From positions 62,001 to 126,000 of IMG/VR virus record IMGVR_UViG_3300033182_000674: a stretch of 64,000 bases of DNA, one strand, 5' to 3'. Under the pieces are notes generated by a model. It saw only the letters and a list, made by a program, of their open reading frames with translations. It did no database searches and was not told the DNA's origin. A program made the translations under genes and the position numbers. Of the stretch, positions 2,497-50,605 are shown in pieces; within the stretch, counting starts at the first letter, position 1, and every line of letters begins with the position of its first letter.

Positions 2497-2904
2497 TTAC
2501 CTAATGTGTTTAGAGTGAATTTTACCTCCAATAAACTCATTATAATATTCGTCAGAAAAAAGAACTTCCCTGTCAAATTGTTCTTTCATCTCGTAGTAAG
2601 TCATTTCGCCTTTTGATTTACATAATCTTAATATCTCACGATGGAATCTTTCACCACCATAATCTTCAACAAGTGTTTTGACTTGTTCGCTTGAACCATA
2701 ATAATCTTGCCAGTCTGAATCGACCTTCTCAATTCTTTTTCTTTTTTTACCTTTCAATGGAGGTCGTTTAATCGTTCTCCAGAAGAGTTTCTTACCAACA
2801 TACTTTTTATTATTTTCCTTATCTGTAATTAGATAAACAAAACCAGTATAGTCTTGGTAGTCATTCTCTTCTGGATTGAACAATTTATTTTTATAATACC
2901 ACAT
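2497..2904 (-). CDS. GIY-YIG family endonuclease-like protein
   Basis: GFVYLIT...KKYVGKK, Y.GSS, F.REIL, YYN motifs; late promoter TATAAATA at 2935-2942. Confidence 0.75.
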   Translation of the reverse strand: MWYYKNKLFNPEENDYQDYTGFVYLITDKENNKKYVGKKLFWRTIKRPPLKGKKRKRIEKVDSDWQDYYGSSEQVKTLVEDYGGERFHREILRLCKSKGEMTYYEMKEQFDREVLFSDEYYNEFIGGKIHSKHIR

Positions 2905-6690: not shown

Positions 6691-7656
6691 TCATGGTGTA
6701 GTATCATTCATCCAGCCACTAAACCTCTTAAGAAGTCTAGGTGCTTTATCTTTTCTTCGTCTTCTATCTATAGCGACGATACCATCATCACCTGCACCAG
6801 CCACACTAGTTGTATTAACTGCTGGTTCTTCGGTAATATTATATTTATCTTTATACATTTCTAGAAGATCATCTGGATCCATAGTTAAGTTATATGCTTT
6901 AGAAATGGTAACCGCATGATGTTCCATTGGAATATCAAGCTTATGAGATGAAATAAGTGTGTGTAAAGCTTTTACAGCCATTTCGATATTTAATTCGTGT
7001 TCTTCTTTCATTTGTTTACCGTTATCCTTAATCCATTTCTTTGCAATTGGATTTTCTGGTGATCTTTTAATCCATGCTCCCATTCTTTTATAAAGAGATT
7101 GAGTAGCACCTTTAAAGTTACCTTCATTAGAATTATCTATAACATACATGTGACGGCCAAATAAGTTTTGGAACTTACCAATATTATCTTGTACTTCTTG
7201 CCACATTTTCTTTACTATATCATCTGGTAAAGATCGTGCTCTAGCCGAATTACGATCTAGTGCAGTTTGTAGATTAGTATTAACAAAAATCATTGAAACA
7301 TCATAACCAAGCTTTCTTAATTCTTCTGCTTGGCCTTTAATTTTATCAAAGTTCTTACCAGTTCCATCAATAACTAATCCTAATCTACCTTTTAGGTATA
7401 GATTCATTTGTGATTTTGTTAATGCAACTGATTTCTTTCTAATTTCTTGACCCTTTGGTGAAAAAATATTAGATGGTGTCATATCCATTTGTGCTTTCTT
7501 AAGAGCTGCTTCAAAAAAATTATCTGAATTAACTAACTTTAAGCCAAATGAAGTTAATGCTGTTTGTCCTACAATAAATGATTTACCAGAACCTGGACCA
7601 CCGGCTAGAAACACAGCCTTAAAAATACCAGGATCATTTACTCCTTCTAATAACAT
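6691..7656 (-). CDS. P-loop kinase (zeta-toxin/AAA_33/PNK-like), possibly virion-internal
   Basis: Walker A GGPGSGKS, VNSD, LVIDGT and lid RN..R.R motifs. Confidence 0.8.
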   Translation of the reverse strand: MLLEGVNDPGIFKAVFLAGGPGSGKSFIVGQTALTSFGLKLVNSDNFFEAALKKAQMDMTPSNIFSPKGQEIRKKSVALTKSQMNLYLKGRLGLVIDGTGKNFDKIKGQAEELRKLGYDVSMIFVNTNLQTALDRNSARARSLPDDIVKKMWQEVQDNIGKFQNLFGRHMYVIDNSNEGNFKGATQSLYKRMGAWIKRSPENPIAKKWIKDNGKQMKEEHELNIEMAVKALHTLISSHKLDIPMEHHAVTISKAYNLTMDPDDLLEMYKDKYNITEEPAVNTTSVAGAGDDGIVAIDRRRRKDKAPRLLKRFSGWMNDTTP

Positions 7657-17027: not shown

Positions 17028-18032
17028 TTAATACCAAATCTGTTTTATGCCAGATATAATTGTTGTTCCACCGCCTTCACCGCCTTCGCTGTTTATTGTA
17101 CGACCAACTATATACTTACTTCCACCACCATAGATTCTTTTTATCTCAGCAATATTATATGGCACATCACTTCTTAATGAAAAAATTCTTTTTCTACTTT
17201 CTGGTAAAGATGTTGATGTGGGTGAAGTGATTGAAGTAATTTTACGTCTTTTAGATAAATTAATTTCTGGTGCTACGCCATTACCATATGATAAAGTTTC
17301 TCTGTATACATCAGCAGGACCAATTGTTGTTTGACCAACAAAATTTGAACCATCACCAGCATAATAAAAATATTGAGAAAGATCTGTAGTTTTCGAAAGA
17401 CTAGGACCTGCCCAGTTAAATGTCATATTAGATCCACCAATCTGTTCTTCATGAACTATACGTATAGGATAATATACATCAGCAGTTAAAGAAATACTAC
17501 CACTTCTTTCTTGATTACCGTGGCCTGAACCCATATCATTATTTACAACTGCGTTAGAAGTAGTTCTTCCAGTTGCGTCTGATGCAATGTCACCAATCCA
17601 AACACCAGAGCCATCATCGGAAGATGTATAAAAAGTGTATGTTCCAGTTGTAGGAGGTCTAAAATACCCAATCCACATATAAGCATAGTTATTGCCAAGA
17701 TCGCCATAACTAATAGATGTAAATAATGTCGCACTTGTGAATGGTAATGTAATACCAACATCACCTGATGCTATTGTATTTCTTGCTGTAGAAGTTAAAA
17801 TTTGTTCACCATATAATCCACCTTGATTATATGTTACATTGCTTGCAGCAACAGCATCACCAATCGCATCACCTTGAGTTGAAAAATGATATGTTCCAGC
17901 TAATATATCAAGATCATTTTGTAACGTCCAAGAGACAGTGGATGAAGAACTTTTAATATGAGATGGCTCATAAAACGCATCTACCTTGTTCTCATCTCCA
18001 TGTCCGTTTGAACGTATACTAAACGTTGCCAT
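17028..18032 (-). CDS. PA14/GLEYA carbohydrate-binding domain virion protein
   Basis: W.GYF.PPTTGTYTF...SDDGS.VWI and L.A..YYPIRI motifs. Confidence 0.8.
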   Translation of the reverse strand: MATFSIRSNGHGDENKVDAFYEPSHIKSSSSTVSWTLQNDLDILAGTYHFSTQGDAIGDAVAASNVTYNQGGLYGEQILTSTARNTIASGDVGITLPFTSATLFTSISYGDLGNNYAYMWIGYFRPPTTGTYTFYTSSDDGSGVWIGDIASDATGRTTSNAVVNNDMGSGHGNQERSGSISLTADVYYPIRIVHEEQIGGSNMTFNWAGPSLSKTTDLSQYFYYAGDGSNFVGQTTIGPADVYRETLSYGNGVAPEINLSKRRKITSITSPTSTSLPESRKRIFSLRSDVPYNIAEIKRIYGGGSKYIVGRTINSEGGEGGGTTIISGIKQIWY

Positions 18033-34863: not shown

Positions 34864-35196
34864 TTAACGACGGTGGATGTAAGCATCAACACGATCAGCA
34901 CATGAGATTGGTAAACTCATCGCTACACGTGATTTGATATACCAATCTGGGACTGTATTACCGTGTTTTTTACGATAATATTCTTTGCAACGTTCAAAAC
35001 GATTTTTGCCACGTCCTTGACATTTAACATAGAATTGATAATCCATACCTGCATTACGAAGTGAACGATTCATATATTTGACAATGTTACGAACTTCGTC
35101 CAACTGCTGCATATCTGCTACAGAATTACAGTCGAAAGTACCAACATATGCGTTACTACGATTTTTATCCATTTTAATACCCATAATATTCACCAA
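34864..35196 (-). CDS. Hypothetical early protein
   Basis: ORF within the early cassette. Confidence 0.6.
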   Translation of the reverse strand: MVNIMGIKMDKNRSNAYVGTFDCNSVADMQQLDEVRNIVKYMNRSLRNAGMDYQFYVKCQGRGKNRFERCKEYYRKKHGNTVPDWYIKSRVAMSLPISCADRVDAYIHRR

Positions 35197-35526
35197 TTAA
35201 AAGTTGTAGTCATAGTATTTGTAAGGTTCGTCAGCAAGAACAAACTCGCTGTTTTTGTAACCAAACAATTCTTTGTTACGATATTTCTGTTTCTTTTTAC
35301 GACGAAGACGAATAACTTCGTTGTTTTCATTAGAAGAGAAAATCCATTTCTGTTCGTGATCATTAGTACAATAGCCTGAATAACCGCCAACAATAAATTC
35401 TGGTTTAAAAGAAGGATCAAGTTCAGCATCTAATTGACGAACTTCGATAGTTTTGTCTGAGATTACTCGAATAACTTCATAAGCTTCACGGTCTGTATAA
35501 CCAAGATATGTTGCGAACTTTTTCAT
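35197..35526 (-). CDS. Hypothetical early protein
   Basis: First ORF after the 35558-35586 promoter; ends YYDYNF. Confidence 0.65.
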   Translation of the reverse strand: MKKFATYLGYTDREAYEVIRVISDKTIEVRQLDAELDPSFKPEFIVGGYSGYCTNDHEQKWIFSSNENNEVIRLRRKKKQKYRNKELFGYKNSEFVLADEPYKYYDYNF

Positions 35527-35546
35527 AATTTCTATCCTTTTTCCAA

Positions 35547-35666
35547 TTTATGGTTATATTATAAGCTAATTCTTCTTAAATGTACACAGTTTTTTTCATT
35601 TTTTTGAAAAGAATTTTTGCTTTAGAATCAATGGCTTGCGTAAGAGAAGGCTCTAAGCCATTGATT
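35547..35666 (-). promoter_or_regulatory. Strong early promoter (TGTACA-17-TATAAT, A-tract UP element) with two inverted IHF-consensus sites
   Basis: -10 at 35558-35563, -35 at 35581-35586; WATCAANNNNTTR at 35626-35638 (+) and 35654-35666 (-); near-identical copy at 50524-50605. Confidence 0.8.
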
Positions 35667-35733
35667 TATAAGGATATTTTATTTTTTAATGGATATGTGA
35701 TTTATGATTAAAATCTTTAATAATGAGAGAAAG

Positions 35734-36030
35734 TAGCAGGGTTTTGGGTGATAAGGAAACCCTGCTAGAACCTCAGATGGATCATGCTGCTAGAGCATAA
35801 CCACCATAAACGTCATCGTTTGCGTTTACTTTAAATGACAGTTAGGCTGTCTAGCCATTCTCAGTAATGCTTTCAAAACCCTGTCGAAACTGATCATCCC
35901 CGCCATAAGCACACCCTGCGTAGTCTTCAAACGTACTCGTCGAACCTTACTGCGCCTGACGGGTGTGCTTATGGTGGAGATGGTGGGAATCGCACCCACG
36001 TCCAGAGCTCCTATTGACATTACGTCAACG
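35734..36030 (-). ncRNA. ssrA: Circularly permuted two-piece tmRNA
   Basis: Acceptor piece with T-arm GTGGG-TGCGATT-CCCAC and CATCTCC-ACCA ending at 35972; 70 nt intervening hairpin; coding piece starting GGGGATG at 35901 (G3.U70 pair); tag frame 35823-35782 = ANDDVYGGYALAA*; terminal hairpin 35734-35767. Confidence 0.93.
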
Positions 36031-36159
36031 AATTAATTGCATCATTTCTGCTGTGACAAAAATAACTTTGCCTAAAAGAAATGTTGCTGCAACCCACAAA
36101 ATCACATAGCACCAACAGCAACTACATGATCCTATGGATTTAAACCATTTATCAAGCAT
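36025..36159 (-). CDS. Small Cys-rich membrane peptide (44 aa)
   Basis: MLDKWFKSIGSCSCCWCYVILWVAATFLLGKVIFVTAEMMQLIR; start overlaps the end of the upstream gene. Confidence 0.45.
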   Translation of the reverse strand: MLDKWFKSIGSCSCCWCYVILWVAATFLLGKVIFVTAEMMQLIR

Positions 36160-36421
36160 CTTTCTTAGAAGCAGTCTTTTTCTTAGTAGTCTTCTTCTTA
36201 GTCGTTGCTTTCTTTTTGGTTGTCTTTTTAGCTGGTGCTTTCTTAGCAGGTTCAGCTGCTTTATCTGCTGCTGTAGCTGGACCAACTTTACCTTTCATTT
36301 GTACATTATGTACGTTAGGTGCTTTATGATTCATATCAACAGGCTTATTGCGATATTTTACAAGCATTGAAATTACCAAAGCTGCAACTACCACACCAAC
36401 AATAATTAATAATGTATCCAT
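36152..36421 (-). CDS. Membrane-anchored protein with histone-like Lys/Ala/Thr tail
   Basis: N-terminal TM helix followed by PAKKAPAKKTTKKK repeats; AGGAG RBS; promoter at 36452-36480. Confidence 0.7.
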   Translation of the reverse strand: MDTLLIIVGVVVAALVISMLVKYRNKPVDMNHKAPNVHNVQMKGKVGPATAADKAAEPAKKAPAKKTTKKKATTKKKTTKKKTASKKDA

Positions 36422-36451
36422 AATAATTTAACTCCTTTCGATATATGGTAT

Positions 36452-36480
36452 ATTATATATCATTTTCTCTGTAATGTAAA
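36452..36480 (-). promoter_or_regulatory. Sigma70-like promoter, probably also driving the tmRNA
   Basis: gTTTACA-17 bp-TATAAT. Confidence 0.75.
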
Positions 36481-36864
36481 CTACTTTTTAGTAGCGTTTT
36501 CCATCAAATATTCAACTTTCTCTTTAAGATCGTCAAGCATTTTTTGATGTTCTTCTAACAAAAGTTCAGTACTTAATACTAAATCATTTGCTTGGTTTAA
36601 TTCTGATAACATAATATCAGAACCATATGTGATATAATCAGACATATCAACAATATTTTGTACAGCATCATCTGAAATATAAACAGTTCCACCTGCATCA
36701 AAATCACAATTTATTTCATAATCATCTAATGAAACTGTGTATGTAGCATCAGCAGAATATTGATCTGGCCAATATGTTGTAGTTGCACCATATGTTTCAC
36801 TTAGATCAATAGTAATAGTTGTACCATCTACAGTAATGATATCGTCATCTTTATCTTTACTCAT
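36481..36864 (-). CDS. Acidic hypothetical protein
   Basis: 127 aa ORF with GGAG RBS. Confidence 0.6.
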   Translation of the reverse strand: MSKDKDDDIITVDGTTITIDLSETYGATTTYWPDQYSADATYTVSLDDYEINCDFDAGGTVYISDDAVQNIVDMSDYITYGSDIMLSELNQANDLVLSTELLLEEHQKMLDDLKEKVEYLMENATKK

Positions 36865-36873
36865 AGTATTCTC

Positions 36874-37149
36874 CTATACATTATCGTGTACATATAGCTG
36901 TAAAAGAGCATAATGAAGTACTTTCATCATATCCTTTTTAGCATCTTCTTTGGTGCCTTTATTACCATATCTTTGGGCGTACTTTAAGATATTACCAACA
37001 AAGAAACCAGCTCCGTGGCCAGCATCAACTATAACTTCACTGGCTTGTATATTACCTTGAGCATAGTGTTGTCCATAAGTTGCGTTAATGTAATCACTAA
37101 GCTCTTTAATATATTTATCTTCGTTGAATTTATAATTTATATTAGCCAT
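36874..37149 (-). CDS. DUF3310-like conserved phage protein
   Basis: YI..TY..HY, GF..GNI.KYA.RYG.K, D..K..HYA motifs. Confidence 0.7.
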   Translation of the reverse strand: MANINYKFNEDKYIKELSDYINATYGQHYAQGNIQASEVIVDAGHGAGFFVGNILKYAQRYGNKGTKEDAKKDMMKVLHYALLQLYVHDNV

Positions 37150-37368: not shown

Positions 37369-38055
37369 CTATTCTGATATAAAATCATTTGCCATAGGGA
37401 ATACCTCAGCAATCACCTTGGCACATTCTCTTGCAAGTTCCATATGCTCTTTTTGAGTTCCATGACCAGATCGCAATTGGATATAATGTACCCAACTACG
37501 AAGAGTTCCATTGACATACAATCTAGACTTAGTTAAACCTTCTGGTAAAACAACTCTAGCTTGTTCTTTTGCAATACCATTATGGATTGCCCATTCATAT
37601 GCTTCTTTAGCAGCATCAATAACTCTTTTCTGATGTTGTTCAAAAAGATAAGCTAACTTTTGATCATCAGTTGGAATAGAGTTTTGACGATTATTATAAT
37701 CTTGTAGACGACATTCACGTGTTACAAATTGATCACCAAACTCTGCTGGATCTGCATAACGTTGTGAAAATTCTTGGAATGAAAAAGATCTATGACGGAG
37801 TAATTGACGAGCAATATCTCTAGTAGTATCTACTTCAATACAAGCGCTTACCATCTCTAATGGAGACCAATGAGCATGCTTAATAAGATAATTAATAAGC
37901 TTTTCTGAAGTTTCAATATTATATTGATTATTAGGATTAGATACTCTAGCTGCAAATGCAATCAACTCTTGAACATTATTCATTTGTTCAGATAGATTGT
38001 CATCAAATACATCTTTATGTAATTGTGAGTAACTTATAAGTTTTGCTTTCATCAT
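37369..38055 (-). CDS. thyX: FAD-dependent thymidylate synthase
   Basis: RHRSFSFQEFSQRY ThyX signature, H.SP.E, EQAR.VLP. Confidence 0.95.
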   Translation of the reverse strand: MMKAKLISYSQLHKDVFDDNLSEQMNNVQELIAFAARVSNPNNQYNIETSEKLINYLIKHAHWSPLEMVSACIEVDTTRDIARQLLRHRSFSFQEFSQRYADPAEFGDQFVTRECRLQDYNNRQNSIPTDDQKLAYLFEQHQKRVIDAAKEAYEWAIHNGIAKEQARVVLPEGLTKSRLYVNGTLRSWVHYIQLRSGHGTQKEHMELARECAKVIAEVFPMANDFISE

Positions 38056-41206: not shown

Positions 41207-42400
41207 TTACATAAAACCGTCAAGAGTTGATGGCTCGTATTCAGACCAGAATGTCTGAGCTTTATTATCTTGAACAGCATATGGTGCTTCAATAGTATCA
41301 ATATTGCCACCTAAGAAGTTTTTAATATTAGTTGCCATATCCATTGCAGTACTTACTGGAACATTTTGTGCAATCATATTAAGATTTCTGCGTCCACCGT
41401 GCAAGATAAAATCTTTTGGCATCTTCATAATATCAAGAGCTTCTCTTGTATTGATATAACGATTTTCATCAGGGTGCGTAAGAGTAGTTACAAAATGACC
41501 AACAAAAGCACCAATATGTCCTTTACCAATCTCTGTCATCTTACGCATTAAGTTACCACCATTATCTAACTTATCTTGCATACGCTTACATTTTTGAGCA
41601 ATACTATCATGACCATTTGCTCTCATCCATTTAGCAACTTCAGTATATTTTATTTTATTTGCTTCAATATAAACCAATGGATTAGTCGACTTCTCAATCA
41701 TATTAAAGAAATCCATATGAGTAATTCCACCGTGCATTTCTTCTAAAATATATTGATAGTATGGATTATCAGTTGGCTTTTGTAAATTAGTTGGACTATT
41801 CCACATTAAGTCATTTACAATATCATCATGTTTAGATGATCTAATCTGTTCTTCAATACGAGTAAAAGGCCGTTTATAATATTCAAATACTGGAATCTTA
41901 TTACCTTTCCAAAAGAAGTAAAAGGTTCTATCACGTACTTGTGATAAGCCATGAAGAAGAGATTTAGTTTTGTATATACTAAGTGTATATCCATTTTCTC
42001 TTGCAAGCTTTCTCATTTGATGAACGATTGGTGCACCCATTTTACTTGCAAGACGTGGAGCATTTTCTCCCCAAAAAACAGCAGGTTTAATTTCTTCAAG
42101 AACATATTTAGCTGATGTAATCATCCAATCATTAGTTGTACTATCACTACGACTACTTGGGCTTAAAGAAGATAAACCTGCACAAGGACAAACTGCATTC
42201 ACTACGTCCACAGATTTATTTTGTAAATCACCTTGATCTAATAAATGATAAGGTACTTCATTATTATAATATTCTAAAAGTTGTTTATCATTATTTTCAA
42301 AAGGTGTATAAGAGAGAATATAATCAGGTTTATTACCAAATACATTCTGCATTGCAATCGTTTCACCACCAATAAGTGGTACTATACTAGCGTACTTCAT
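41207..42400 (-). CDS. DNA cytosine-C5 methyltransferase-like protein
   Basis: Motif IV CPCAGLS, VI ENA, VIII Q.R.R, IX/X R....RE....M..P.DF...QNVP; degenerate motif I (PLIGG). Confidence 0.75.
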   Translation of the reverse strand: MKYASIVPLIGGETIAMQNVFGNKPDYILSYTPFENNDKQLLEYYNNEVPYHLLDQGDLQNKSVDVVNAVCPCAGLSSLSPSSRSDSTTNDWMITSAKYVLEEIKPAVFWGENAPRLASKMGAPIVHQMRKLARENGYTLSIYKTKSLLHGLSQVRDRTFYFFWKGNKIPVFEYYKRPFTRIEEQIRSSKHDDIVNDLMWNSPTNLQKPTDNPYYQYILEEMHGGITHMDFFNMIEKSTNPLVYIEANKIKYTEVAKWMRANGHDSIAQKCKRMQDKLDNGGNLMRKMTEIGKGHIGAFVGHFVTTLTHPDENRYINTREALDIMKMPKDFILHGGRRNLNMIAQNVPVSTAMDMATNIKNFLGGNIDTIEAPYAVQDNKAQTFWSEYEPSTLDGFM

Positions 42401-43400
42401 TTAAAAATTTCCTCGCAGTTGCTAGTGCAGAATTAATTGCTTGGTGCATATCAACATAAACGTACATACCACAACGACCAATAAACTGCATCTTAGTTTC
42501 ATCTACCATATCTTTATACAGTTTATATATCTTTCTATTCTTGCCTTCTACATCTTTTACTGGATAATAACGCTCAAGATTATTATCACGATAGTCACAC
42601 GGTTCTTCATAAGTAAGAACAGTCATCTTATTATTATCGCCATGACCTGGAATATTTTTCCATTCGGTTACTCGAGTATATGGACCATCATGAGTAAAGT
42701 TAACAGTACCAGTTGGTAGCACTTTAGACATTGGTAATTCCACATTATGGAACTTAATAGAGCGATACGGTAATTCGCCATGACAAAAATGGAAGTAATC
42801 ATCAATTGGCATTGAATTAAAGATATAATCGTAATCATCTTCCATTTCATATGTAAATTCTGTATCTAAATTTACTGTAATGTTTTCATGTAAGAAAATA
42901 CTTTCAAAGACTTCAGTATAACCATTCTTTGGCATCATCTGATATTCATCATTAGGAAAATATAATTCGTTATCATCATCGCGAGTAGGAATACGATTAA
43001 TAATTGATGGATCTAGTTCATCAAGTGTTTTACCCCACATTTTTAGAGTATAAGGTCTAAAGAAAATATCTAAAACGTTTTCTTCACCAACAATCTCTTT
43101 AGTTTCTTTATTTACTGGAAGAGTTACATAACGGCCATCACTTAACTGTGCTTTTACTTTATGTTTATAATCAATCCATTCAGTAAACTTAGATAGCCAA
43201 TCAACAACATCTTTATTATTAGTATGAAACAAATGTGGACCATACTGGTGGATTCTGATGCCATTCGCATCAACATAATCATAGGCATTACCACCAATAT
43301 GGTCGCGTTTATCGATGACAGTTACTTCATGATCTGCTTCTGCTAATTCACGAGCAATAACTGCACCAGAAAATCCAGCACCAACTACTAAGACTTTCAT
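42387..43400 (-). CDS. glf: UDP-galactopyranose mutase
   Basis: VVGAGFSG, HIGGNAYD, H.YGPHLFHT, LPYRS, RYYP, GRCG.Y.Y.DMHQAI. Confidence 0.92.
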   Translation of the reverse strand: MKVLVVGAGFSGAVIARELAEADHEVTVIDKRDHIGGNAYDYVDANGIRIHQYGPHLFHTNNKDVVDWLSKFTEWIDYKHKVKAQLSDGRYVTLPVNKETKEIVGEENVLDIFFRPYTLKMWGKTLDELDPSIINRIPTRDDDNELYFPNDEYQMMPKNGYTEVFESIFLHENITVNLDTEFTYEMEDDYDYIFNSMPIDDYFHFCHGELPYRSIKFHNVELPMSKVLPTGTVNFTHDGPYTRVTEWKNIPGHGDNNKMTVLTYEEPCDYRDNNLERYYPVKDVEGKNRKIYKLYKDMVDETKMQFIGRCGMYVYVDMHQAINSALATARKFLNEVR

Positions 43401-44509
43401 AGAATAACTCCAAGTTCTTTTTGCTGTAGTTCTTTATCTAATGGATGATTCTTATATAGCATATGTTTTTGTGCTGCTGCTGTTTCCATCAATTCGTCAA
43501 GAGACATTTGCTCTACATCATGAGCAGTTAAGCTTGCAAGTTTTTCATCTCCATATAATAAAAACATTTCATCATATGCACCAATAAGAATAGAACCTGC
43601 GTCGGCAACTTGTAATGGACGAGCTCTCCACCAGCCTGATCCTGCATGATCATAACCTGGCATTAAACAACCCCATTGTTCTGCATAAACTTTACACATA
43701 TCACCTTCACCAAGCCGACGTTGTTTTTCTTTACGAGAACCAAAGAATTCAATCTCCCAATTAGTCACATTTTGTTTCTTTAACCACTTAGCAGTCTTAC
43801 CTTGTACTAATGAAGCAAAGTTAAAGATCTTAGCTTTATTAGAAGGAGATACAGTATCTTCAGCTTCAGTTAACGTCATTTGTTGTTCCATAAAATCCAT
43901 TTCATCTACAGGAATATCACCACGATCACCGGGTTTACGGTTACGATGATATGGATTAGGATTATAACCAACCAACAATTCTTTAGGATAGTCAATCAAC
44001 TTACTTAGATCACCACCCATAAAGACAGACATTAATACACGAGCTTTCTTTTCGCCAATATATTTTACTGCATCTAAAAGAATATCAGTATGTGGTTCCA
44101 ATACTTCACGTGAAAGAGTTGGATCACAACCTTGACTTTGTTGAATAGTAAACTCTTTTAATAGAGATTCTTTATCAGTGCATGATTGAATACCTTTAAA
44201 AATATCAGCTGTTTGCCAATCATCAAATGCTAGTACAAGATTTTCTTTTGGTGTAGCGTGAATAGCCCATAGACCATTATAAAAAGCAAGTTGTAATGCT
44301 TGACGTGGTGAAGCAAGAAAACAAATAACACGATGATATTCAGATAAATCTTCACCAATATTAACAAGACGTTGTTCTACTTCATAACCCATATCTTCTA
44401 AACAACGTATTAAAGAATAATGTGAAGGAACTACTTTCAATTGCTGGCGTAAATAAAAATCTTTTGTTGTTTGATTCTTATTCATACCAGTGATTAGAAT
44501 TTTTTTCAT
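43397..44509 (-). CDS. Putative GT-B DNA glycosyltransferase (T4 beta-glucosyltransferase-like)
   Basis: KVVPS...L..MGYEV...D...Y.R.I N-terminus and R..Q...AG.IL. C-terminal motif resemble T4 BGT as I recall it; start reassigned to 44509 (TAATG overlap). Confidence 0.6.
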   Translation of the reverse strand: MKKILITGMNKNQTTKDFYLRQQLKVVPSHYSLIRCLEDMGYEVEQRLVNIGEDLSEYHRVICFLASPRQALQLAFYNGLWAIHATPKENLVLAFDDWQTADIFKGIQSCTDKESLLKEFTIQQSQGCDPTLSREVLEPHTDILLDAVKYIGEKKARVLMSVFMGGDLSKLIDYPKELLVGYNPNPYHRNRKPGDRGDIPVDEMDFMEQQMTLTEAEDTVSPSNKAKIFNFASLVQGKTAKWLKKQNVTNWEIEFFGSRKEKQRRLGEGDMCKVYAEQWGCLMPGYDHAGSGWWRARPLQVADAGSILIGAYDEMFLLYGDEKLASLTAHDVEQMSLDELMETAAAQKHMLYKNHPLDKELQQKELGVIL

Positions 44510-45366
44510 TATTTTAACTCCATTTGATATGCTGATTCGCACATATCTTTTAGATCACGTTTAGTTTCCAAATACTTAGATTTGTTATCAACACACAACT
44601 CAGCTGGATCGCCTTCGCGGCGTGGTCCATATTCAATTTTAAAGTTGTTTGTACATTGTACCATTATATCACAAACCTCTGCATTTGTAAACCCTTTACC
44701 AGAACCAAGACATTCATAGTCTTTATTCTCAGGAGTATTTAGTGCAGCATTACAGATAGCATCTGCGAGATCTACCACATGAATATAATCACGAATACAT
44801 GTTCCATCACGCGTAGGATAATCATCTCCAAAGATAACCATCTTCTCTCTTTTACCAGCAGCAACCTCAGCTGCTACTCTAATAATATGAGTCGATTCAC
44901 CAATCTGTCTAAACTCACCACCAGATCCAGCAACATTAAAGAATCTAAAGATAGTATAATTCTTTGCCATCTGTTTAATAACATCTTCAGCCGCTACTTT
45001 AGATTTAGCATATGGAGAAATAGGATCAAATGCGCCAGCAGTAGAAGCAAAGATAAAGTGATCACAATCTACATTCTTTAAAACTTTCATTGTCTTATGA
45101 AGATTAGTATCATAATATTTTGCAGGATTAGTCATCGATTCTGCAACAGAAATATAACCTGCACAATGTACTACTACATCATATCGTCCAACCCACAAAG
45201 CAGCATCATGAATATCATAATGTGTTAGGTACTTTCTAACTGGTTTAGCATTAGGTGAATCTTCAATATCAACACCTGTTACTTTAAATCCAGCATCATA
45301 TAATGCTTTTGCGGTATGAGAACCAATATAACCATTTACACCTGTTACTAATGCAGTCTTACTCAT
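44509..45366 (-). CDS. galE: UDP-glucose 4-epimerase-like SDR
   Basis: TG..GYIGSH, ES...P.KYY..N, YAKSK, R.FNVAG, DGTCIRDYIHV.DLA, RREGDP. Confidence 0.88.
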   Translation of the reverse strand: MSKTALVTGVNGYIGSHTAKALYDAGFKVTGVDIEDSPNAKPVRKYLTHYDIHDAALWVGRYDVVVHCAGYISVAESMTNPAKYYDTNLHKTMKVLKNVDCDHFIFASTAGAFDPISPYAKSKVAAEDVIKQMAKNYTIFRFFNVAGSGGEFRQIGESTHIIRVAAEVAAGKREKMVIFGDDYPTRDGTCIRDYIHVVDLADAICNAALNTPENKDYECLGSGKGFTNAEVCDIMVQCTNNFKIEYGPRREGDPAELCVDNKSKYLETKRDLKDMCESAYQMELK

Positions 45367-45835
45367 TTTCTACTCCCAAGCGTTTAATATTAACTTTTGC
45401 TTCATTGCACATCGAAACAGTAGTATCATAAGACTCTTGCCAAATTGGTGGAATCTCTCCTTCCATATCCCAATAGATGTTTTTGACACCTACTTGGATA
45501 ACACCTTTGGCACATTCAGAGCACATAGGAAGCCCCCAGATGTAAAGATCTGATCCGTCTAAAGATACACCATTATACGTTGCATTATATATGCAGTTCA
45601 TTTCTGCGTGCACGACGTATTTATATTTAGTCTCGCGATCCTCATATCGGTTCTCGTCATCATTGATTCCTCGTGGGAAACCATTATAACCCTGTGCAAG
45701 TACTTGACCTTTTGAGCCGACTGCTACAGCACCGATCTTTTTAGATGGATCCTTAGACCAACCAGAAAATTCTTTCGCTAAATTCATATAGCGGTTTTGC
45801 CATGATTTATTAACAGGCCACATAATTAATCCCAC
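45359..45835 (-). CDS. cd: dCMP deaminase
   Basis: SKDPS, GYNGFPRG, HAE.N, P.C.EC. Confidence 0.92.
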   Translation of the reverse strand: MGLIMWPVNKSWQNRYMNLAKEFSGWSKDPSKKIGAVAVGSKGQVLAQGYNGFPRGINDDENRYEDRETKYKYVVHAEMNCIYNATYNGVSLDGSDLYIWGLPMCSECAKGVIQVGVKNIYWDMEGEIPPIWQESYDTTVSMCNEAKVNIKRLGVENE

Positions 45836-46371
45836 AAACTTCTAAAATATTTTCCAAATAAACGAAATCCATTGTCCATACGTTTAGAATATTCATCATA
45901 CTTTTCTTTATCAAACTTTCCTTTTAAAGAACTTGTATCCATTTCATACCACTCATATTCTTCATTTTCACCCTCATCATTAGGAAATAAAAGTAATTGA
46001 GCTGGTCCAACACCAGTACTCTCCATTTCAAATAAACTTACTGAATCGCTATCATAGTTAAAGAACTGGTCTTCCCATTCGTTATTAAGACTAGCAAAAG
46101 CAAAAATCATTTCATCAATTACATAATCCCAAGCTTTAAAATGATATGGATCTGTTTCACCTACTTCAATAGGCAAATCACAGCGTAAGCGTTCTGGACG
46201 ATCTTCCATATCAACAAATGGCGCACCATGTTTTTCCTTTTTTAATTGTCTCAACATTGGTTCAACTAACAATGCTAGTGTATGATCCATTGACCAAGTA
46301 TCGTAATCATCTATATGAATAGAGACATCACGATAACCTTCTTCTACATATGGTCCAATTTGTACATTCAT
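45826..46371 (-). CDS. Conserved phage hypothetical protein
   Basis: DTWSMD.TLA, W....DEMIFAF, GF.LFGKY...LWD; start reassigned to 46371 (ATGA overlap). Confidence 0.65.
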   Translation of the reverse strand: MNVQIGPYVEEGYRDVSIHIDDYDTWSMDHTLALLVEPMLRQLKKEKHGAPFVDMEDRPERLRCDLPIEVGETDPYHFKAWDYVIDEMIFAFASLNNEWEDQFFNYDSDSVSLFEMESTGVGPAQLLLFPNDEGENEEYEWYEMDTSSLKGKFDKEKYDEYSKRMDNGFRLFGKYFRSLWD

Positions 46372-46823
46372 TTCATTAAATCTCCAAAGAAAGAGAAAGC
46401 AACATCTTTTGCAACTTGATCTGTTACTTCCCACATCGGTATCATAAGATTAATTTCCTCTGATGTTGGTGGTACAAACATTTTATTTGTATCATCAAAC
46501 CGACCTTCATTAATAGTATTCATCCAAATTACATAATCAGGTTTAAGCAACTTACGCGTTTCAGGTGTAGGAGAAATCATATCAACAATAGAATAAGGAT
46601 ATACAGAATTATCTACAAGTTTACGCATACGAGTTGCAGCTCGAATACGACCTTCTTCTGAAAAATCCCAATCTTGATATGCTTCACGAATTTTATCTGC
46701 ATTAAACCAATTAGGAATTACGCCATGATTTTCAAATTCAGTTTTTAGTTTTTCAGCAAATGTAGTCTTACCTGAACCAGGTAGACCCATCACTAATATC
46801 ATTTTATTCGACATCCCAATCAT
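46368..46823 (-). CDS. Adenylylsulfate-kinase-like P-loop kinase
   Basis: GLPGSGKTT, NAD.IR, DFS.EGR.R. Confidence 0.75.
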   Translation of the reverse strand: MIGMSNKMILVMGLPGSGKTTFAEKLKTEFENHGVIPNWFNADKIREAYQDWDFSEEGRIRAATRMRKLVDNSVYPYSIVDMISPTPETRKLLKPDYVIWMNTINEGRFDDTNKMFVPPTSEEINLMIPMWEVTDQVAKDVAFSFFGDLMK

Positions 46824-47511
46824 TCCTAATTAAATCAAAATGGCGTTCATATACATGTAAATTTTGAACTTGCCAGTAAATTGTACTTGGTGTAATAACA
46901 TCATCAATAGTTTCTGTTTGACGATTAATGTCATCACATAGTTTACGAAGAACATATTTTTGCCAAGCAAAATCATTCTTATATCCAAAGACGACATCAT
47001 TTGATCGCATTTGAACTACTGCATACATTTTTTTATTACGAATATAATAAGTTACACCATTAGTACAAATAAAATCAGACTTACCATCTTCATTAAATTC
47101 TGTCCAGATAGTTGGACGTTGATAAACCATTTCAGCACGACGGCCGTCTGGATTATTGAGTAACTCATTTAATACTTTCTCGTATTGATTACCATATTGT
47201 TCAGAGAAAATTAGTAATCCATAATTTGAATTAATAAGGCCGTCGCTGTTAGCAGCATACTTCCAAGCAGCAGGAGGATCGCGATCTTCGCCGAAAATGT
47301 CATTGATATTGTTCGATTGTTTTTCATACCATTCAATCTCCTTCATGATATATTCATTATTAGGTTTACCAAAGATTGCTGGTTCATCAGCAATAAAAGA
47401 AGCGCCAATCCATTCAATAGTCTTAGCACCAGTTTTATCTGTGGTAAAGTTCTTTGCTCTTAGTTCGCCTTCAAAGAAAGCACGGACATTTTTAACTGTT
47501 GGGATATTCAT
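46804..47511 (-). CDS. 42: dCMP hydroxymethylase (T4 gp42 homolog)
   Basis: DKTG.KTIE.IGASF.ADEP.IFG, INSNYG, SDF.CTN, MRSNDVVFG..ND.AWQKYVL, LHVY.RHF, all closely matching T4 gp42; Asp retained at the cytosine-specificity position. Confidence 0.92.
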   Translation of the reverse strand: MNIPTVKNVRAFFEGELRAKNFTTDKTGAKTIEWIGASFIADEPAIFGKPNNEYIMKEIEWYEKQSNNINDIFGEDRDPPAAWKYAANSDGLINSNYGLLIFSEQYGNQYEKVLNELLNNPDGRRAEMVYQRPTIWTEFNEDGKSDFICTNGVTYYIRNKKMYAVVQMRSNDVVFGYKNDFAWQKYVLRKLCDDINRQTETIDDVITPSTIYWQVQNLHVYERHFDLIRNDWDVE

Positions 47512-47930
47512 TATTTAGCCTTTTCAATATTATAAACTGATTTACGTAAACCACTACTTGAGAATCTATGATCTCGTTTATTAAAGTAAAGTTCAATATC
47601 ACGTCGACGACATTCATCTTTACCAGTAAAGTCTTTATCACGATACTCATCACCGAGAATACGAATATTAATCGGATACATGTTTATTATATCAAGTAAA
47701 TCGGCTTCTGTACAATACGGAATGATTTCATCTACATATTTTACTGCAGCCAATTGTGTATGTCTTTCTACAATGGTTTGTACCGGTGAATTCTTTTCAG
47801 GACGATCAACTGATGGATCTACTTGTAATCCACAAATTAAATAATCACATCGTGCTTTTGCATCACGCAACATTGTGATATGACCAGCATGTAATAAATC
47901 AAATGTACTACAAGTAAATCCTACAATCAT
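47511..47930 (-). CDS. TagD/RfaE-like cytidylyltransferase
   Basis: FDLLHAGH, ER...L....YVDE, R.H..SSS. Confidence 0.85.
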   Translation of the reverse strand: MIVGFTCSTFDLLHAGHITMLRDAKARCDYLICGLQVDPSVDRPEKNSPVQTIVERHTQLAAVKYVDEIIPYCTEADLLDIINMYPINIRILGDEYRDKDFTGKDECRRRDIELYFNKRDHRFSSSGLRKSVYNIEKAK

Positions 47931-48040
47931 TGCTTCTTTTCCTTCGCTTTGTTATTCATCAATTTACAAGATCCCCATTTACATGATGGGTTTATTTTCT
48001 TTTTACATACTACACAAGTATCAGTCTGAGATGAATTCAT
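47927..48040 (-). CDS. Small Cys/Lys-rich peptide (37 aa), not in the ORF track
   Basis: MNSSQTDTCVVCKKKINPSCKWGSCKLMNNKAKEKKQ; stop overlaps the next ATG (ATGA). Confidence 0.4.
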   Translation of the reverse strand: MNSSQTDTCVVCKKKINPSCKWGSCKLMNNKAKEKKQ

Positions 48041-48377
48041 TGTATTCTTCTTCTGTCATAAATGATTCAATTAAACTAGTATCTTCAACTTCTAATTTAA
48101 ACATCCATACAGATGCATCATCATTTAAAGTTTCTGGTGTATCTAGAATATCTTCATTAACTTCGACTACTGTTCCAGCCATTGGACAATAAACATCTGA
48201 TGCTGCTTTTACAGATTCAACTACTGCACAATCTTCATCTGCTTCATAGTACTTACCAACTTCTGGTAACTCAATGAAAACTAAATCACCAAGTAATTCT
48301 GCAGCATGCGCAGTAATACCAACAAAGACGTAATCTCCGTCTTGTTCTACCCATTCGTGTTCTTTTGTATAACGCAT
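48021..48377 (-). CDS. gcvH: Glycine cleavage system H protein
   Basis: YT.EHEWV, VGIT..A...LGD.VF.ELP, lipoyl-Lys motif VESVKAASD. Confidence 0.93.
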   Translation of the reverse strand: MRYTKEHEWVEQDGDYVFVGITAHAAELLGDLVFIELPEVGKYYEADEDCAVVESVKAASDVYCPMAGTVVEVNEDILDTPETLNDDASVWMFKLEVEDTSLIESFMTEEEYNEFISD

Positions 48378-48721
48378 TATTCTTTTCTTCCTCCGTCAAA
48401 GACGCAAACAAAGTATAAGCCATTCTCATTAGCATATACTCTATGAAAAGCACCATCTGGTATTTGAATAATATCACCTGCTCTTACATTGAACACTTCA
48501 TCATCAATTTCCATTTCACCATCGCCATACATGAAAAAATAAACTTCTTCTTGTCCTTCATGGCTATGACCATTGGTTGCTTTATTTGGTTGTAATCTTG
48601 TTGAACTAAGTACTAGGTTATTTAGTAATGTATTATCAGTGACCACATAACGATCATCTGATTTTACTACATTACCATTTACTACCCACCCAGCATGAAC
48701 ATAATCTTCAATATCAATCAT
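48377..48721 (-). CDS. Cupin-domain protein
   Basis: GHSH..QEEVY.F..G.G and GD...IP.G.FHRV. Confidence 0.85.
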   Translation of the reverse strand: MIDIEDYVHAGWVVNGNVVKSDDRYVVTDNTLLNNLVLSSTRLQPNKATNGHSHEGQEEVYFFMYGDGEMEIDDEVFNVRAGDIIQIPDGAFHRVYANENGLYFVCVFDGGRKE

Positions 48722-49481
48722 TATTAAAACCTAACAATTTATTGTTATATTCCAATAGAGATTTAGTAGCAGTTGGATCAATGCCTACACTTTCAGCCCA
48801 AGCACACCAACCATAGATATCTTTTGGAATACATTTACTATTAGCTCCACGATTATCAGGGAAGACAAAAGTCCACCATAGATTTTGTCGTGGGTCATCA
48901 CCATAAACAGCTTCTCGAATAGTATAATAATCTACTCCAGCTGCTTCACATGCATCATATAATTCTTGGCATTGCATTACCTTATAGAAAATTGCACGAT
49001 TTTCAGAGAATTTAATAATCTCTGCTTCATATGCAGATACTTGACGAATATTAACATTAGCATTATAAGCTTGTTGATAACATTCAATAACTTTACGAGT
49101 ATCTTCTTTAGTACCACCAAGAATCATAAACTGACGAGAATCCATTTGTAAGAATGGATGATTAGGTGTTTCACCAAGATATTCTGGTTGAACTACAATG
49201 CGTTTATTATATTTCTTAGCCATCTCATCAGCAAATCCTGGTTGAGTAGCAGAACGAATAACAATGAAATCACATCCGCATTCTTTAATAGCATCTTCTA
49301 CAGCAGAACAATCTAATCCATCGCCTTGATTCCACGGAGTAGGTACGGCAAGAAAAGCAATATCACAATTTTCTAAAGGCTTTGTAAATCCTTCGATATA
49401 TTTATCGTAAACTTGTGCATCAGGAAAAAGTTTTTGTGTTGCTTTGCCAATCCAACCGTATCCAATGATTCCTACTTTCAT
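48714..49481 (-). CDS. UDP-glucose/GDP-mannose dehydrogenase-like protein (lacks C-terminal domain)
   Basis: GIIGYG.IG, AVPTP, IRS, PEYL, AE..K..EN, CIPKD. Confidence 0.8.
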   Translation of the reverse strand: MKVGIIGYGWIGKATQKLFPDAQVYDKYIEGFTKPLENCDIAFLAVPTPWNQGDGLDCSAVEDAIKECGCDFIVIRSATQPGFADEMAKKYNKRIVVQPEYLGETPNHPFLQMDSRQFMILGGTKEDTRKVIECYQQAYNANVNIRQVSAYEAEIIKFSENRAIFYKVMQCQELYDACEAAGVDYYTIREAVYGDDPRQNLWWTFVFPDNRGANSKCIPKDIYGWCAWAESVGIDPTATKSLLEYNNKLLGFNND

Positions 49482-50510: not shown

Positions 50511-50523
50511 AGCAAATCTCCAC

Positions 50524-50605
50524 TTTATGGATATATTATAAGCTAATTCTTCTCAAATGTACACAGTTTTTTTCAGTTATTTTTTCTTTTAGAATCAATG
50601 GCTTA
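50524..50605 (-). promoter_or_regulatory. Second copy of the early promoter/IHF-site element
   Basis: TGTACA(50558-63)-17-TATAAT(50535-40); AATCAATGGCTTA at 50593-50605; ~50 bp near-identical to 35547-35598. Confidence 0.8.

What the first reader, a model, noticed from the sequence alone, without database searches (positions are those of the whole stretch)
35734..36030. Phage-encoded circularly permuted two-piece tmRNA
Seen: the acceptor piece (T-arm, CAUCUCC-ACCA) lies upstream of the coding piece (GGGGAUG..., G3.U70 alanine identity). Helix 2 can form between the pieces (CAGGGUUUU/GGAGCUCUG; GCAUUAC/GUAAUGU), and the resume frame encodes ANDDVYGGYALAA with a ClpXP-type LAA end. Established: this permuted layout is characteristic of Alphaproteobacteria, with independent cases in some cyanobacteria and betaproteobacteria. 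Standard gene callers miss it. Inference: it identifies the host group and may rescue ribosomes stalled by mRNA- or tRNA-cleaving defences. No smpB is seen in the window.
Basis: partly seen in the sequence, partly recalled or inferred. Interest (0 to 1): 0.8.

Follow-up and report, generated by a model that had tools for sequence, protein, structure and literature searches.

The report
Phage-encoded two-piece (permuted) tmRNA gene
A marine T4-like phage carries a complete, well-conserved circularly permuted tmRNA (ssrA) gene of the alphaproteobacterial type; this kind of gene is already known from marine myophages, so it is a new member of a known kind, with one odd feature: its spacer, which should be discarded, is unusually conserved.

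Summary
On the minus strand, ARAGORN calls a permuted tmRNA with the tag ANDDVYGGYALAA. Rfam gives 116.6 bits to tmRNA_permuted and 66.7 bits to alpha_tmRNA. An unconstrained fold reproduces the acceptor stem with G3.U70, the T-arm and the P2 helices. The window is part of a 219.7 kb T4-like uncultivated phage from marine and estuarine samples.

Four related phage contigs carry the same gene at 82-91% identity, while flanking genes are 69-78% identical. They show compensatory changes and in-frame tag variation, so the gene is under selection. No smpB is present in the window.

Two-piece ssrA genes in marine myophages are already published (Melnitz, Mosig, pelagimyophage contigs), so this is a new member of a known kind.

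The host inference is weak. Melnitz carries an alpha-type ssrA but infects OM43. This phage is closer to C48C1 (no host on record) and to cyanomyophages than to the SAR11 phage Mosig. The anti-defence role is untested, and RNA runs gave no evidence of expression or processing.

One thing is unexplained. The 70-nt intervening segment is more conserved than the mature RNA in this family, unlike in other phage subfamilies.

The parts
36452..36480 (-). Sigma-70-like promoter (TTTACA-17-TATAAT, 11 of 12) upstream of the small ORF that precedes the tmRNA. It is the candidate start of the transcription unit.
   Evidence: This is a consensus match only; the number of such sites in the region is no higher than in shuffles, so its role is inferred.
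36152..36421 (-). 89-aa ORF with an N-terminal transmembrane helix and a lysine-rich tail, immediately upstream of the tmRNA. It is probably co-transcribed.
   Evidence: Translation. The homologue in L122 (85 aa) sits in the same position. DNA similarity of 72-74% lies next to the tmRNA in L120 and L122. No Pfam or PHROG match. It is absent upstream of the tmRNA in L146.
35972..36034 (-). Acceptor piece: the 5' strands of P2 (36034-36030, 36023-36017, 36011-36003), T-arm (35999-35983), 3' acceptor strand CAUCUCC (35982-35976), and encoded discriminator plus CCA, ACCA (35975-35972).
35902..35971 (-). Intervening segment (70 nt), expected to be excised. It forms a long imperfect hairpin whose outer 11-14 bp stem stacks on the acceptor stem. 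Its sequence is unusually conserved in this phage family.
   Evidence: Fold (-25.3 kcal/mol, z -2.3). Alignment and conservation.
35735..35901 (-). Coding piece: 5' acceptor strand GGGGAUG (35901-35895), UUUCGAC D-loop analogue (35889-35883), 3' strands of P2 (35883-35875, 35870-35864, 35862-35857), small hairpin GGCU/AGCC (35856-35845), resume codon GCA (35823-35821), tag ORF (35823-35785), stop UGA (35784-35782), and 3' hairpin (35766-35735).
35782..35823 (-). Tag reading frame encoding ANDDVYGGYALAA plus a stop codon.
   Evidence: ARAGORN; sequence. Relatives encode ANDSEYALAA, ANDSTYALAA and ANDDTFALAA, and the length difference is in frame.
35735..35766 (-). 3'-terminal hairpin (11-bp stem) marking the 3' end of the conserved unit. 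It may be a terminator or a processing and stability element.
   Evidence: Only 2 variable columns among four relatives, and these form one compensatory pair (A-U to G-C). The pattern scan did not call it an intrinsic terminator.

Best explanation
This is a genuine ssrA gene, maintained by selection, that encodes a circularly permuted (two-piece) tmRNA of the alphaproteobacterial type. It is carried by a large (about 220 kb) T4-like marine or estuarine myophage.

Shown here:
- The gene has every sequence and structure element of a permuted tmRNA.
- It lies inside a phage gene array, on the same strand as all neighbouring genes.
- It is conserved in related phages more strongly than the flanking genes, with compensatory base-pair changes and an open tag frame.

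Inferred from established tmRNA biology:
- The gene is transcribed early, probably together with the small upstream ORF.
- The precursor folds so that the intervening hairpin brings together the 3' end of the acceptor piece and the 5' end of the coding piece.
- Host tRNA-processing enzymes cut it: RNase P at the 5' side of G35901, and 3' trimming back to the encoded CCA at 35972. RNase III may also cut in the long intervening hairpin. The two pieces stay together through the acceptor stem and P2.
- Host AlaRS charges it through G3.U70 and A73.
- Host SmpB and EF-Tu deliver it to ribosomes stalled on broken or non-stop mRNAs. No phage smpB is seen in the window.
- Translation resumes at GCA and adds ANDDVYGGYALAA, a degron with an ALAA end for host proteases.

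The likely benefit is to keep ribosomes available during infection, when host mRNA is being degraded and/or RNA-cleaving defences are active. This benefit is the least certain step.
For: - Detection.
- Architecture from an unconstrained fold.
- Phage context (gp43, gp44/62, gp45, gp46/47, UvsX, UvsW, gp41, RegA, RNase H, baseplate and tail-fibre proteins; every ORF of 120 aa or more apart from two overlapping minor ones is on the minus strand).
- Source contig of 219,676 bp in IMG/VR.
- Homologous tmRNAs in four other viral contigs at 82-91% identity, against 69-78% for flanking coding DNA.
- RNAalifold finds 14 pairs with changes on both sides.
- Across 32 unique viral permuted tmRNAs, the acceptor stem and T-arm are canonical in 380 of 382 cells, against 58-70% with shifted partners. 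G3.U70 is present in 32 of 32. Position 5:68 is A-U in 18, G-C in 9 and C-G in 5.
- Tag frames stay open, with an in-frame length difference.
- The known SAR11-phage (Mosig) SsrA scores nearly the same on the same models.
- Published precedent: PMC9004378, PMC11915505, PMC7162821.
Against: - There is no direct evidence of transcription, processing, alanylation or tagging. The RNA-run contigs covered only the universally conserved T-arm, or came from relatives.
- The PK1 region is reduced to a 4-bp hairpin.
- The alpha-specific model scores lower than the generic one and fits the 5' hairpin and the 3' domain poorly.
- No canonical intrinsic terminator follows the gene.
- The biological benefit is conjecture.
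Confidence: 0.82

Rival explanations
1. The RNA is made, but it acts mainly as a competitor or re-programmer of host trans-translation rather than as a simple supplement. It could titrate host SmpB. It could also replace the host tag with a phage-specific one, so that tagged proteins meet a different fate, for example faster recycling of host proteins into amino acids.
For: - A TLD-only phage tmRNA (mycobacteriophage DS6A) inhibits host tmRNA, as cited in PMC4131195 and PMC11915505.
- Buchholz et al. propose tagging of host proteins for recycling.
- No phage smpB is in the window, so host SmpB must be shared.
- The tag interior varies freely among relatives, while AND... and ...ALAA are kept.
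Against: - The gene keeps a complete tag frame with a canonical ALAA end, like host tmRNAs.
- Nothing in the sequence distinguishes competition from supplementation.
Confidence: 0.1
2. It is a host-derived ssrA fragment carried as an attachment site, or a remnant of imprecise prophage excision. It would then not be a working gene.
For: tmRNA genes are common integration sites, and ssrA fragments occur in prophages (PMC4383910, listed; discussion in PMC9004378).
Against: - Both pieces, the tag frame and the 3' hairpin are complete.
- The phage is T4-like, and no integrase was found among the 60 ORFs scanned.
- The gene is conserved with compensatory changes in four other viral contigs.
- No cellular genome in the 185,579-species collection carries the 24-nt intervening-segment core that was searched.
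Confidence: 0.02
3. It is an assembly chimera or bacterial contamination inside a viral contig.
For: The tmRNA is richer in G+C (0.45-0.48) than the phage (about 0.34).
Against: - Higher G+C is normal for structured RNAs.
- The gene is flanked on both sides by phage genes on the same strand.
- The same gene with the same upstream ORF occurs in independent viral contigs from other samples (L121, L146) and in a DNA run (X4).
Confidence: 0.01
4. It is a decaying pseudogene, recently acquired and no longer used.
For: - The PK1 region is reduced.
- The fit to the alpha-specific model is only moderate.
- The closest isolate, C48C1, lacks a tmRNA, so the gene is dispensable in the clade.
Against: - The mature parts and the 3' hairpin are far more conserved than the flanks, which are unalignable at 30-48%.
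- There are compensatory substitutions.
- All relatives keep open tag frames ending in ALAA.
Confidence: 0.05

Closest known systems
Two-piece ssrA of marine myophages: Methylophilales phage Melnitz, Pelagibacter phage Mosig EXVC030M and pelagimyophage contigs (Buchholz et al. 2022, PMC9004378)
   Same: - A T4-like marine myophage of the Kyanoviridae type carrying a permuted, alpha-type tmRNA with an AND/..ALAA-style tag.
- The phage-borne ssrA is common in the clade but not universal.
- The gene lies near thyX.
- Mosig SsrA is the best match among 50,697 deposited phage genomes and scores like the window's gene on Rfam.
   Different: - Only the conserved cores align (81% over 53 nt).
- The phage is a different lineage: 17 of 76 ORFs shared with Mosig at 41% identity, and a genome of about 220 kb against 141 kb.
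- The gene order differs: thyX, then 4 small ORFs, then ssrA here; ssrA, then a gp33-like gene, then thyX in Mosig.
- No glutamine riboswitch was detected here. The same scan did not detect one at the Mosig ssrA either.
- The tag is longer, 13 aa against 9-10 aa.
Alphaproteobacterial two-piece tmRNA (Rfam RF01849; Caulobacter paradigm, Keiler et al. 2000, as cited)
   Same: - Permuted gene order, acceptor stem with G3.U70, encoded CCA, P2 helices, an AND... tag ending in LAA, and a 3' hairpin.
- RF01849 is the best-scoring member of the tmRNA clan.
   Different: - The gene is encoded by a virus.
- The score is only 66.7 bits, below the generic permuted model. The database authors report the opposite order on average.
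- The alpha-specific 5' hairpin and much of the 3' domain are missing or poorly matched.
Picocyanobacterial-type two-piece tmRNAs in viral contigs (tags ANNIVAFSR... / ANKIVAFSR...)
   Same: Permuted tmRNAs carried by marine viral contigs found in the same scan.
   Different: - The tag family is different.
- In the two examples that could be measured (L044, L080), the intervening segments are very short, 1-5 nt.
- None of these appear among the window's 40 best matches, all of which have AND/ANE/ANN-type tags.
One-piece tmRNAs of mycobacteriophages (Bxz1 group), Bacillus phage G, Stenotrophomonas phages and huge phages
   Same: A phage-borne ssrA, usually without a phage smpB (PMC4131195; PMC7162821).
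   Different: Those genes have the standard, unpermuted order. Some huge phages also encode SmpB.

Membership tests
tmRNA (ssrA), permuted / two-piece form (Rfam RF04321) | Covariance-model score above the curated threshold | tested here: met
   116.6 bits against a gathering score of 47, with the full model length 1-213 matched.
tmRNA (ssrA), permuted / two-piece form (Rfam RF04321) | Permuted gene order: the acceptor piece (3' half of the tRNA-like domain, T-arm, CCA) lies upstream of the coding piece (5' acceptor strand, tag ORF), with an intervening segment between them | tested here: met
   36034-35972, 35971-35902 and 35901-35735 on the minus strand.
tmRNA (ssrA), permuted / two-piece form (Rfam RF04321) | A 7-bp acceptor stem with the G3.U70 alanine identity pair, an A73 discriminator, and a 5-bp T-arm with a 7-nt loop | tested here: met
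   GGGGAUG/CAUCUCC followed by ACCA. Across 32 viral homologues, 380 of 382 cells are canonical, G.U is present in 32 of 32, and position 5:68 shows clear covariation.
tmRNA (ssrA), permuted / two-piece form (Rfam RF04321) | Long-range P2 helices holding the two pieces together | tested here: met
   The MFE and cofold predictions recover them. P2a has pairs with changes on both sides in the close family. The outermost P2 segment is invariant, so it gives no information either way.
tmRNA (ssrA), permuted / two-piece form (Rfam RF04321) | Resume codon GCN and a short tag ORF ending in a hydrophobic degron plus a stop codon | tested here: met
   GCA at 35823, tag ANDDVYGGYALAA, UGA stop. Relatives keep open frames ending in ALAA.
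tmRNA (ssrA), permuted / two-piece form (Rfam RF04321) | Pseudoknot PK1 upstream of the resume codon | tested here: inconclusive
   Only a 4-bp hairpin (GGCU/AGCC, one compensatory change in L122) with an overlapping alternative 5-bp pairing. L120 and L146 have a 27-34-nt longer element here. Pseudoknots were not modelled.
tmRNA (ssrA), permuted / two-piece form (Rfam RF04321) | The precursor is cleaved into two RNAs; the RNA is alanylated; it binds SmpB; it tags proteins | not testable with these tools
   The RNA-run contigs were uninformative. The phage is uncultivated.
tmRNA (ssrA), permuted / two-piece form (Rfam RF04321) | An SmpB partner is available | tested here: not met
   No SmpB domain in 60 ORFs of 120 aa or more. 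No six-frame match to E. coli SmpB, best E above 1. Only 64 of about 220 kb was examined. Host SmpB is presumed, as for other phage tmRNAs.
Alphaproteobacterial subtype (Rfam RF01849 alpha_tmRNA) | Score above the gathering threshold and best among the clan members (standard, alpha, beta, cyano, mitochondrial) | tested here: met
   66.7 bits against 50; four lower-scoring clan matches were suppressed. However, the 5' hairpin and the 3' domain of the model fit poorly.
Melnitz/Mosig-type phage ssrA (PMC9004378) | Carried by a marine T4-like myophage, with an alpha-type sequence | tested here: met
Melnitz/Mosig-type phage ssrA (PMC9004378) | A glutamine riboswitch in the 3' domain of ssrA | tested here: not met
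   No riboswitch family at E up to 5 in 35000-37000. Caveat: the same library at its gathering threshold found none next to the Mosig ssrA either, so the test has no working positive control. The paper itself says the riboswitch is not a defining feature.
Melnitz/Mosig-type phage ssrA (PMC9004378) | The phage belongs to the pelagimyophage/Melnitz genome cluster | tested here: not met
   Only 17 of 76 ORFs are shared with Mosig, at 41% identity. The phage is closer to C48C1 (39 ORFs, 53%).

The most novel reading that the evidence does not exclude
The 70-nt 'intervening segment' of this ssrA family may not be a disposable spacer. It may be a functional RNA element in its own right: a sequence-specific processing signal (for example a phage-tuned RNase III-type site), or a small hairpin RNA released as a by-product with its own role. 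It may also be exchanged between different phage tmRNA genes.

Its first 60 nt are almost invariant in four phages whose T-arm, P2, pre-resume region and tags all differ. Two metatranscriptome assemblies carry the same segment, with 1 mismatch, between a clearly different acceptor stem and T-arm.
Probability: 0.2. Interest if true: 0.55.

Novelty: new member of a known kind. Interest (0 to 1): 0.3.

Why it matters
The finding adds a well-documented example of a virus carrying a ribosome-rescue RNA. The example lies outside the pelagimyophage/Melnitz cluster, in a C48C1-like lineage of large T4-like marine phages. It shows that the gene is under purifying selection there.

It also warns against reading the host from the type of a phage's tmRNA.

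The only point that goes beyond the published picture is the unusually conserved intervening segment. If it is functional, it would be the first indication that the excised part of a permuted tmRNA precursor has a role. That role could be tested with simple expression constructs.

Tried and rejected
1. blastn of the locus against 50,697 deposited phage genomes. No match at E 1e-5. At E up to 1, only the T-arm core matched, with Mosig SsrA best.

2. A search for the donor or host by exact pattern in 185,579 species genomes. The intervening-segment core and the alternative tRNA-like domain from the RNA-run contigs both gave 0 hits.

3. The same intervening-segment core in JGI metagenome contigs: 0 hits. 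The alternative tRNA-like domain in IMG/VR: 0 hits.

4. Laying RNA runs on the locus to see transcription and processing ends. Only Logan contigs were available. They covered the universal T-arm from other organisms, plus fragments from relatives, so nothing can be said about expression.

5. Glutamine riboswitch as in Melnitz: none. The positive control on Mosig also failed.

6. Known ribozyme or other Rfam family in the intervening segment: only chance-level hits, mir-1789 at 20.7 bits, E 0.32.

7. A protein-coding reading of the region. The 64-aa ORF at 35826-36020 is interrupted by stop codons in L120, so it is rejected as spurious.

8. Literature on phage C48C1: nothing found.

9. The upstream ORF as an SmpB substitute. 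It has a transmembrane helix and a lysine-rich tail, no known domain, and is absent in L146. There is no basis for the idea.

10. The L119 hit as independent support: rejected, because it is the window's own contig.

Full report
**1. The observation**

ARAGORN finds one RNA gene in the 64 kb window: a permuted tmRNA at 36064-35691 with the tag ANDDVYGGYALAA. Rfam's curated thresholds are passed by two models only. These are tmRNA_permuted (RF04321, 116.6 bits, gathering 47, 36034-35782) and alpha_tmRNA (RF01849, 66.7 bits, gathering 50, 36085-35732).

Exact coordinates:
- Acceptor piece: 36034-35972, ending CAUCUCC-ACCA.
- Intervening segment: 35971-35902 (70 nt).
- Coding piece: from GGGGAUG at 35901.
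- Resume codon: GCA at 35823.
- Stop codon: UGA at 35784-35782.
- 3' hairpin: 35766-35735.

An unconstrained minimum-energy fold of the precursor, and a cofold of the two pieces, reproduce the 7-bp acceptor stem (with G3.U70), the T-arm, three P2 segments and a 14-bp stem in the intervening segment.

**2. What carries it**

Every ORF of 120 aa or more, apart from two overlapping minor ones, lies on the minus strand. The window encodes these T4-type functions:
- DNA polymerase gp43.
- Clamp and clamp loader.
- gp46/47-like nuclease.
- UvsX and UvsW.
- gp41-like helicase.
- RegA.
- RNase H.
- Ribonucleotide reductase.
- ThyX.
- Baseplate-wedge and tail-fibre proteins.

G+C is about 0.34. An IMG/VR locus that is 100% identical over 14.9 kb shows that the window comes from IMGVR_UViG_3300033182_000674, a 219,676-bp viral contig. 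DNA runs holding the sequence are marine, estuary and aquaculture metagenomes. So the gene is phage-borne. It is not an assembly chimera, because the same gene with the same upstream ORF recurs in other viral contigs and in a DNA run.

**3. Is it maintained by selection?**

Four other viral contigs (L120, L121, L122, L146) carry homologous tmRNAs. These are 82-91% identical to the window's, while the adjoining protein-coding DNA is 69-78% identical. Similarity stops abruptly at the gene's ends, where the flanks are 28-48% identical. RNAalifold on the five sequences predicts 80 pairs. Of these, 14 have changes on both sides, in the T-arm, acceptor stem, P2a, the outer stem of the intervening hairpin and the 3' hairpin.

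A pattern scan of IMG/VR gave 117 loci, and ARAGORN found 92 tmRNAs in them, most of them permuted. Across 32 unique sequences that could be put in register:
- The acceptor stem and T-arm are canonical in 380 of 382 cells, against 58-70% when the partner columns are shifted.
- G3.U70 is present in 32 of 32.
- Position 5:68 is A-U (18), G-C (9) or C-G (5).

Tags in the close relatives are ANDSEYALAA, ANDSTYALAA and ANDDTFALAA. The window's three extra residues are in frame. This is the signature of a working gene, not of a relic.

**4. How it most likely works**

The steps are inferred from established tmRNA biology. [quoted passage not shown]

- A near-consensus sigma-70-like promoter (36480-36452) precedes a small ORF (36421-36152), and the tmRNA follows it.
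- In L121, L120 and L122 that ORF abuts the tmRNA, so co-transcription is likely.
- A separate promoter-like repeat lies downstream, at 35598-35542. It suggests that the unit ends at the 3' hairpin, although the pattern scan called no canonical terminator.
- RNase P would cut 5' of G35901. The 3' end would be trimmed to the encoded CCA.
- AlaRS, SmpB and EF-Tu must come from the host. No SmpB domain occurs in the 60 ORFs scanned, and a six-frame search with E. coli SmpB finds nothing.
- RNA evidence could not be obtained. The three metatranscriptome assemblies that share words with the locus cover only the universal T-arm or belong to relatives.

**5. Comparison with what is known**

Phage-borne two-piece tmRNAs are published. 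Buchholz et al. 2022 describe one in the OM43 myophage Melnitz. They found 53 two-piece tmRNAs among 18,146 phage genomes, 50 of them marine or aquatic. They also found permuted tmRNAs in 17 of 47 Melnitz-like contigs. The 2025 tmRNA database lists 79 phage sequences and 11,946 permuted ones. Huge phages with tmRNA and even SmpB are also known.

Among deposited phages, the best match to the window's tRNA-like domain is the annotated SsrA of Pelagibacter phage Mosig. Mosig's gene scores 93.6 and 67.6 bits on the same two models and also lies near thyX. The window's gene is therefore a new member of a known kind.

It differs from the published examples in these ways:
- It sits in another phage lineage.
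- It has a longer tag.
- Its pre-resume region is reduced.
- No riboswitch was detected. My control on Mosig did not detect one either, so that negative is weak.

**6. The host inference**

The gene is alpha-type: RF01849 beats the other clan members. All 40 best viral matches carry AND/ANE/ANN-type tags rather than the ANNIVAFSR tags of the picocyanobacterial type. But the type of gene is not the host. Melnitz carries an alpha-type ssrA and infects OM43.

Comparison of this phage with reference phages:

| Reference phage | Host | ORFs shared (of 76) | Mean identity | gp43 identity |
|---|---|---|---|---|
| C48C1 (G+C 0.43, no tmRNA) | none on record | 39 | 53% | 54% |
| Cyanomyophages | Synechococcus / Prochlorococcus | not measured | not measured | about 48% |
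| Mosig | SAR11 | 17 | 41% | 41% |

Exact-pattern scans of 185,579 species genomes found neither the intervening core nor a variant tRNA-like domain. The host stays unknown. A non-cyanobacterial marine heterotroph, possibly an alphaproteobacterium, is the best guess.

**7. The one unexplained feature**

In WIN, L120, L121 and L122, the first 60 nt of the intervening segment show 1 variable column in 64. The mature tRNA-like domain plus P2 show 23 in 110 (Fisher p = 1.6e-4). Yet the T-arm, the pre-resume region and the tag differ among these four.

This is not the norm. In other phage subfamilies, pairs whose mature domains are 85-100% identical have intervening segments of 24-175 nt that do not align (0.25-0.65 identity). 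In the window's family, pairs with 85-87% mature identity keep 93-99%. In the more distant L146 only the outer stem is kept, through compensatory changes.

Contigs from two metatranscriptomes carry the same segment, with 1 mismatch over 35904-35978. There it lies between a different acceptor stem (GGGGGCG/CGCUUCC) and a different T-arm.

The segment folds into a long imperfect hairpin (-25.3 kcal/mol, z = -2.3). It matches no Rfam family. Possible readings are recent recombination, a sequence-specific processing signal, or a by-product RNA with its own function. I cannot separate these.

**8. Verdict**

- The identification is correct.
- The host and anti-defence inferences are not established.
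- The novelty is modest.

Noticed in passing
window 35902-35971 (-): The intervening segment of the permuted tmRNA is more conserved than the mature RNA in four related phages: 1 of 64 variable columns against 23 of 110. In other phage tmRNA subfamilies it is the most variable part.
   Followed up: yes
window 35904-35978; RNA runs X2 and X3: Metatranscriptome contigs carry the same intervening segment (1 mismatch) between a different tRNA-like domain (acceptor GGGGGCG/CGCUUCC, T-arm GGGG/CCCC). This is a mosaic or a second tmRNA family sharing the spacer. It was not found in IMG/VR, in species genomes or in JGI contigs by exact pattern.
   Followed up: partly
window 36152-36421 (-): An 89-aa ORF with one transmembrane helix, a conserved KPVDMNHKAPNVHNVQMKGKVGPATAADK core and a lysine-rich tail. 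It stays directly upstream of the tmRNA in L120, L121 and L122, although the pair sits elsewhere relative to the core genes (next to Dam/Hsp20/gp43 in L122). No family match.
   Followed up: partly
window 36046-36147 and 36025-36158 (-): About 102 nt between the small ORF and the tmRNA is absent in a DNA-run contig (X4) and in L120-L122. It creates a 44-aa cysteine-rich hydrophobic ORF whose end overlaps the first bases of the acceptor piece.
   Followed up: no
window 35542-35598 and 50519-50575: A 57-nt intergenic repeat (94.7% identical) containing a sigma-70-like site (TGTACA-17-TATAAT). It is probably a repeated early promoter. Depth in DNA run X4 rises about tenfold over 35505-35627.
   Followed up: partly
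window 35726-35809; DNA run X4, record 12: A relative in a marine metagenome has the end of the tag and the region after it replaced by 317 other letters, while the flanks match. This means the 3' half of the coding piece varies among strains.
   Followed up: no
window 41207-49481 (-): A cluster that looks like a DNA base-modification and nucleotide-sugar module. It holds a C5 cytosine methylase, UDP-galactopyranose mutase, an NAD-dependent epimerase, dCMP deaminase, a small P-loop kinase, a weak thymidylate-synthase-like protein (a possible pyrimidine hydroxymethylase), a cytidylyltransferase and a UDP-glucose dehydrogenase-like protein. It sits alongside ThyX at 37369-38055.
   Followed up: no
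window 17028-18032 (-): A protein with a PA14/GLEYA carbohydrate-binding domain inside the tail-fibre and baseplate region. It is a possible receptor-binding accessory.
   Followed up: no
window 2497-2904 and 6691-7656 (-): A SegE-like GIY-YIG homing endonuclease, and a protein like a zeta-toxin/AAA_33 kinase, among the nucleotide-metabolism genes.
   Followed up: no
window 35826-36020 (-): A 64-aa ATG ORF lies entirely inside the tmRNA gene. It is interrupted by stop codons in L120, so it is a likely false gene call in automated annotation.
   Followed up: yes
L204 7384-7591 (Pelagibacter phage Mosig, MT647606 about 108.2 kb): A manA RNA motif (RF01745, 64 bits) lies 3 kb downstream of the Mosig ssrA. 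No glutamine riboswitch family reached the gathering score within 4 kb of that ssrA, although the literature reports one in this phage.
   Followed up: no
L208-L211 (phage C48C1, OQ984149): The closest deposited relative of the window phage has 7 tRNAs but no tmRNA, and G+C of 0.43 against 0.34 here. Related IMG/VR contigs (L132-134, L145, L146) have the tmRNA 2-3 kb upstream of thyX rather than downstream.
   Followed up: partly
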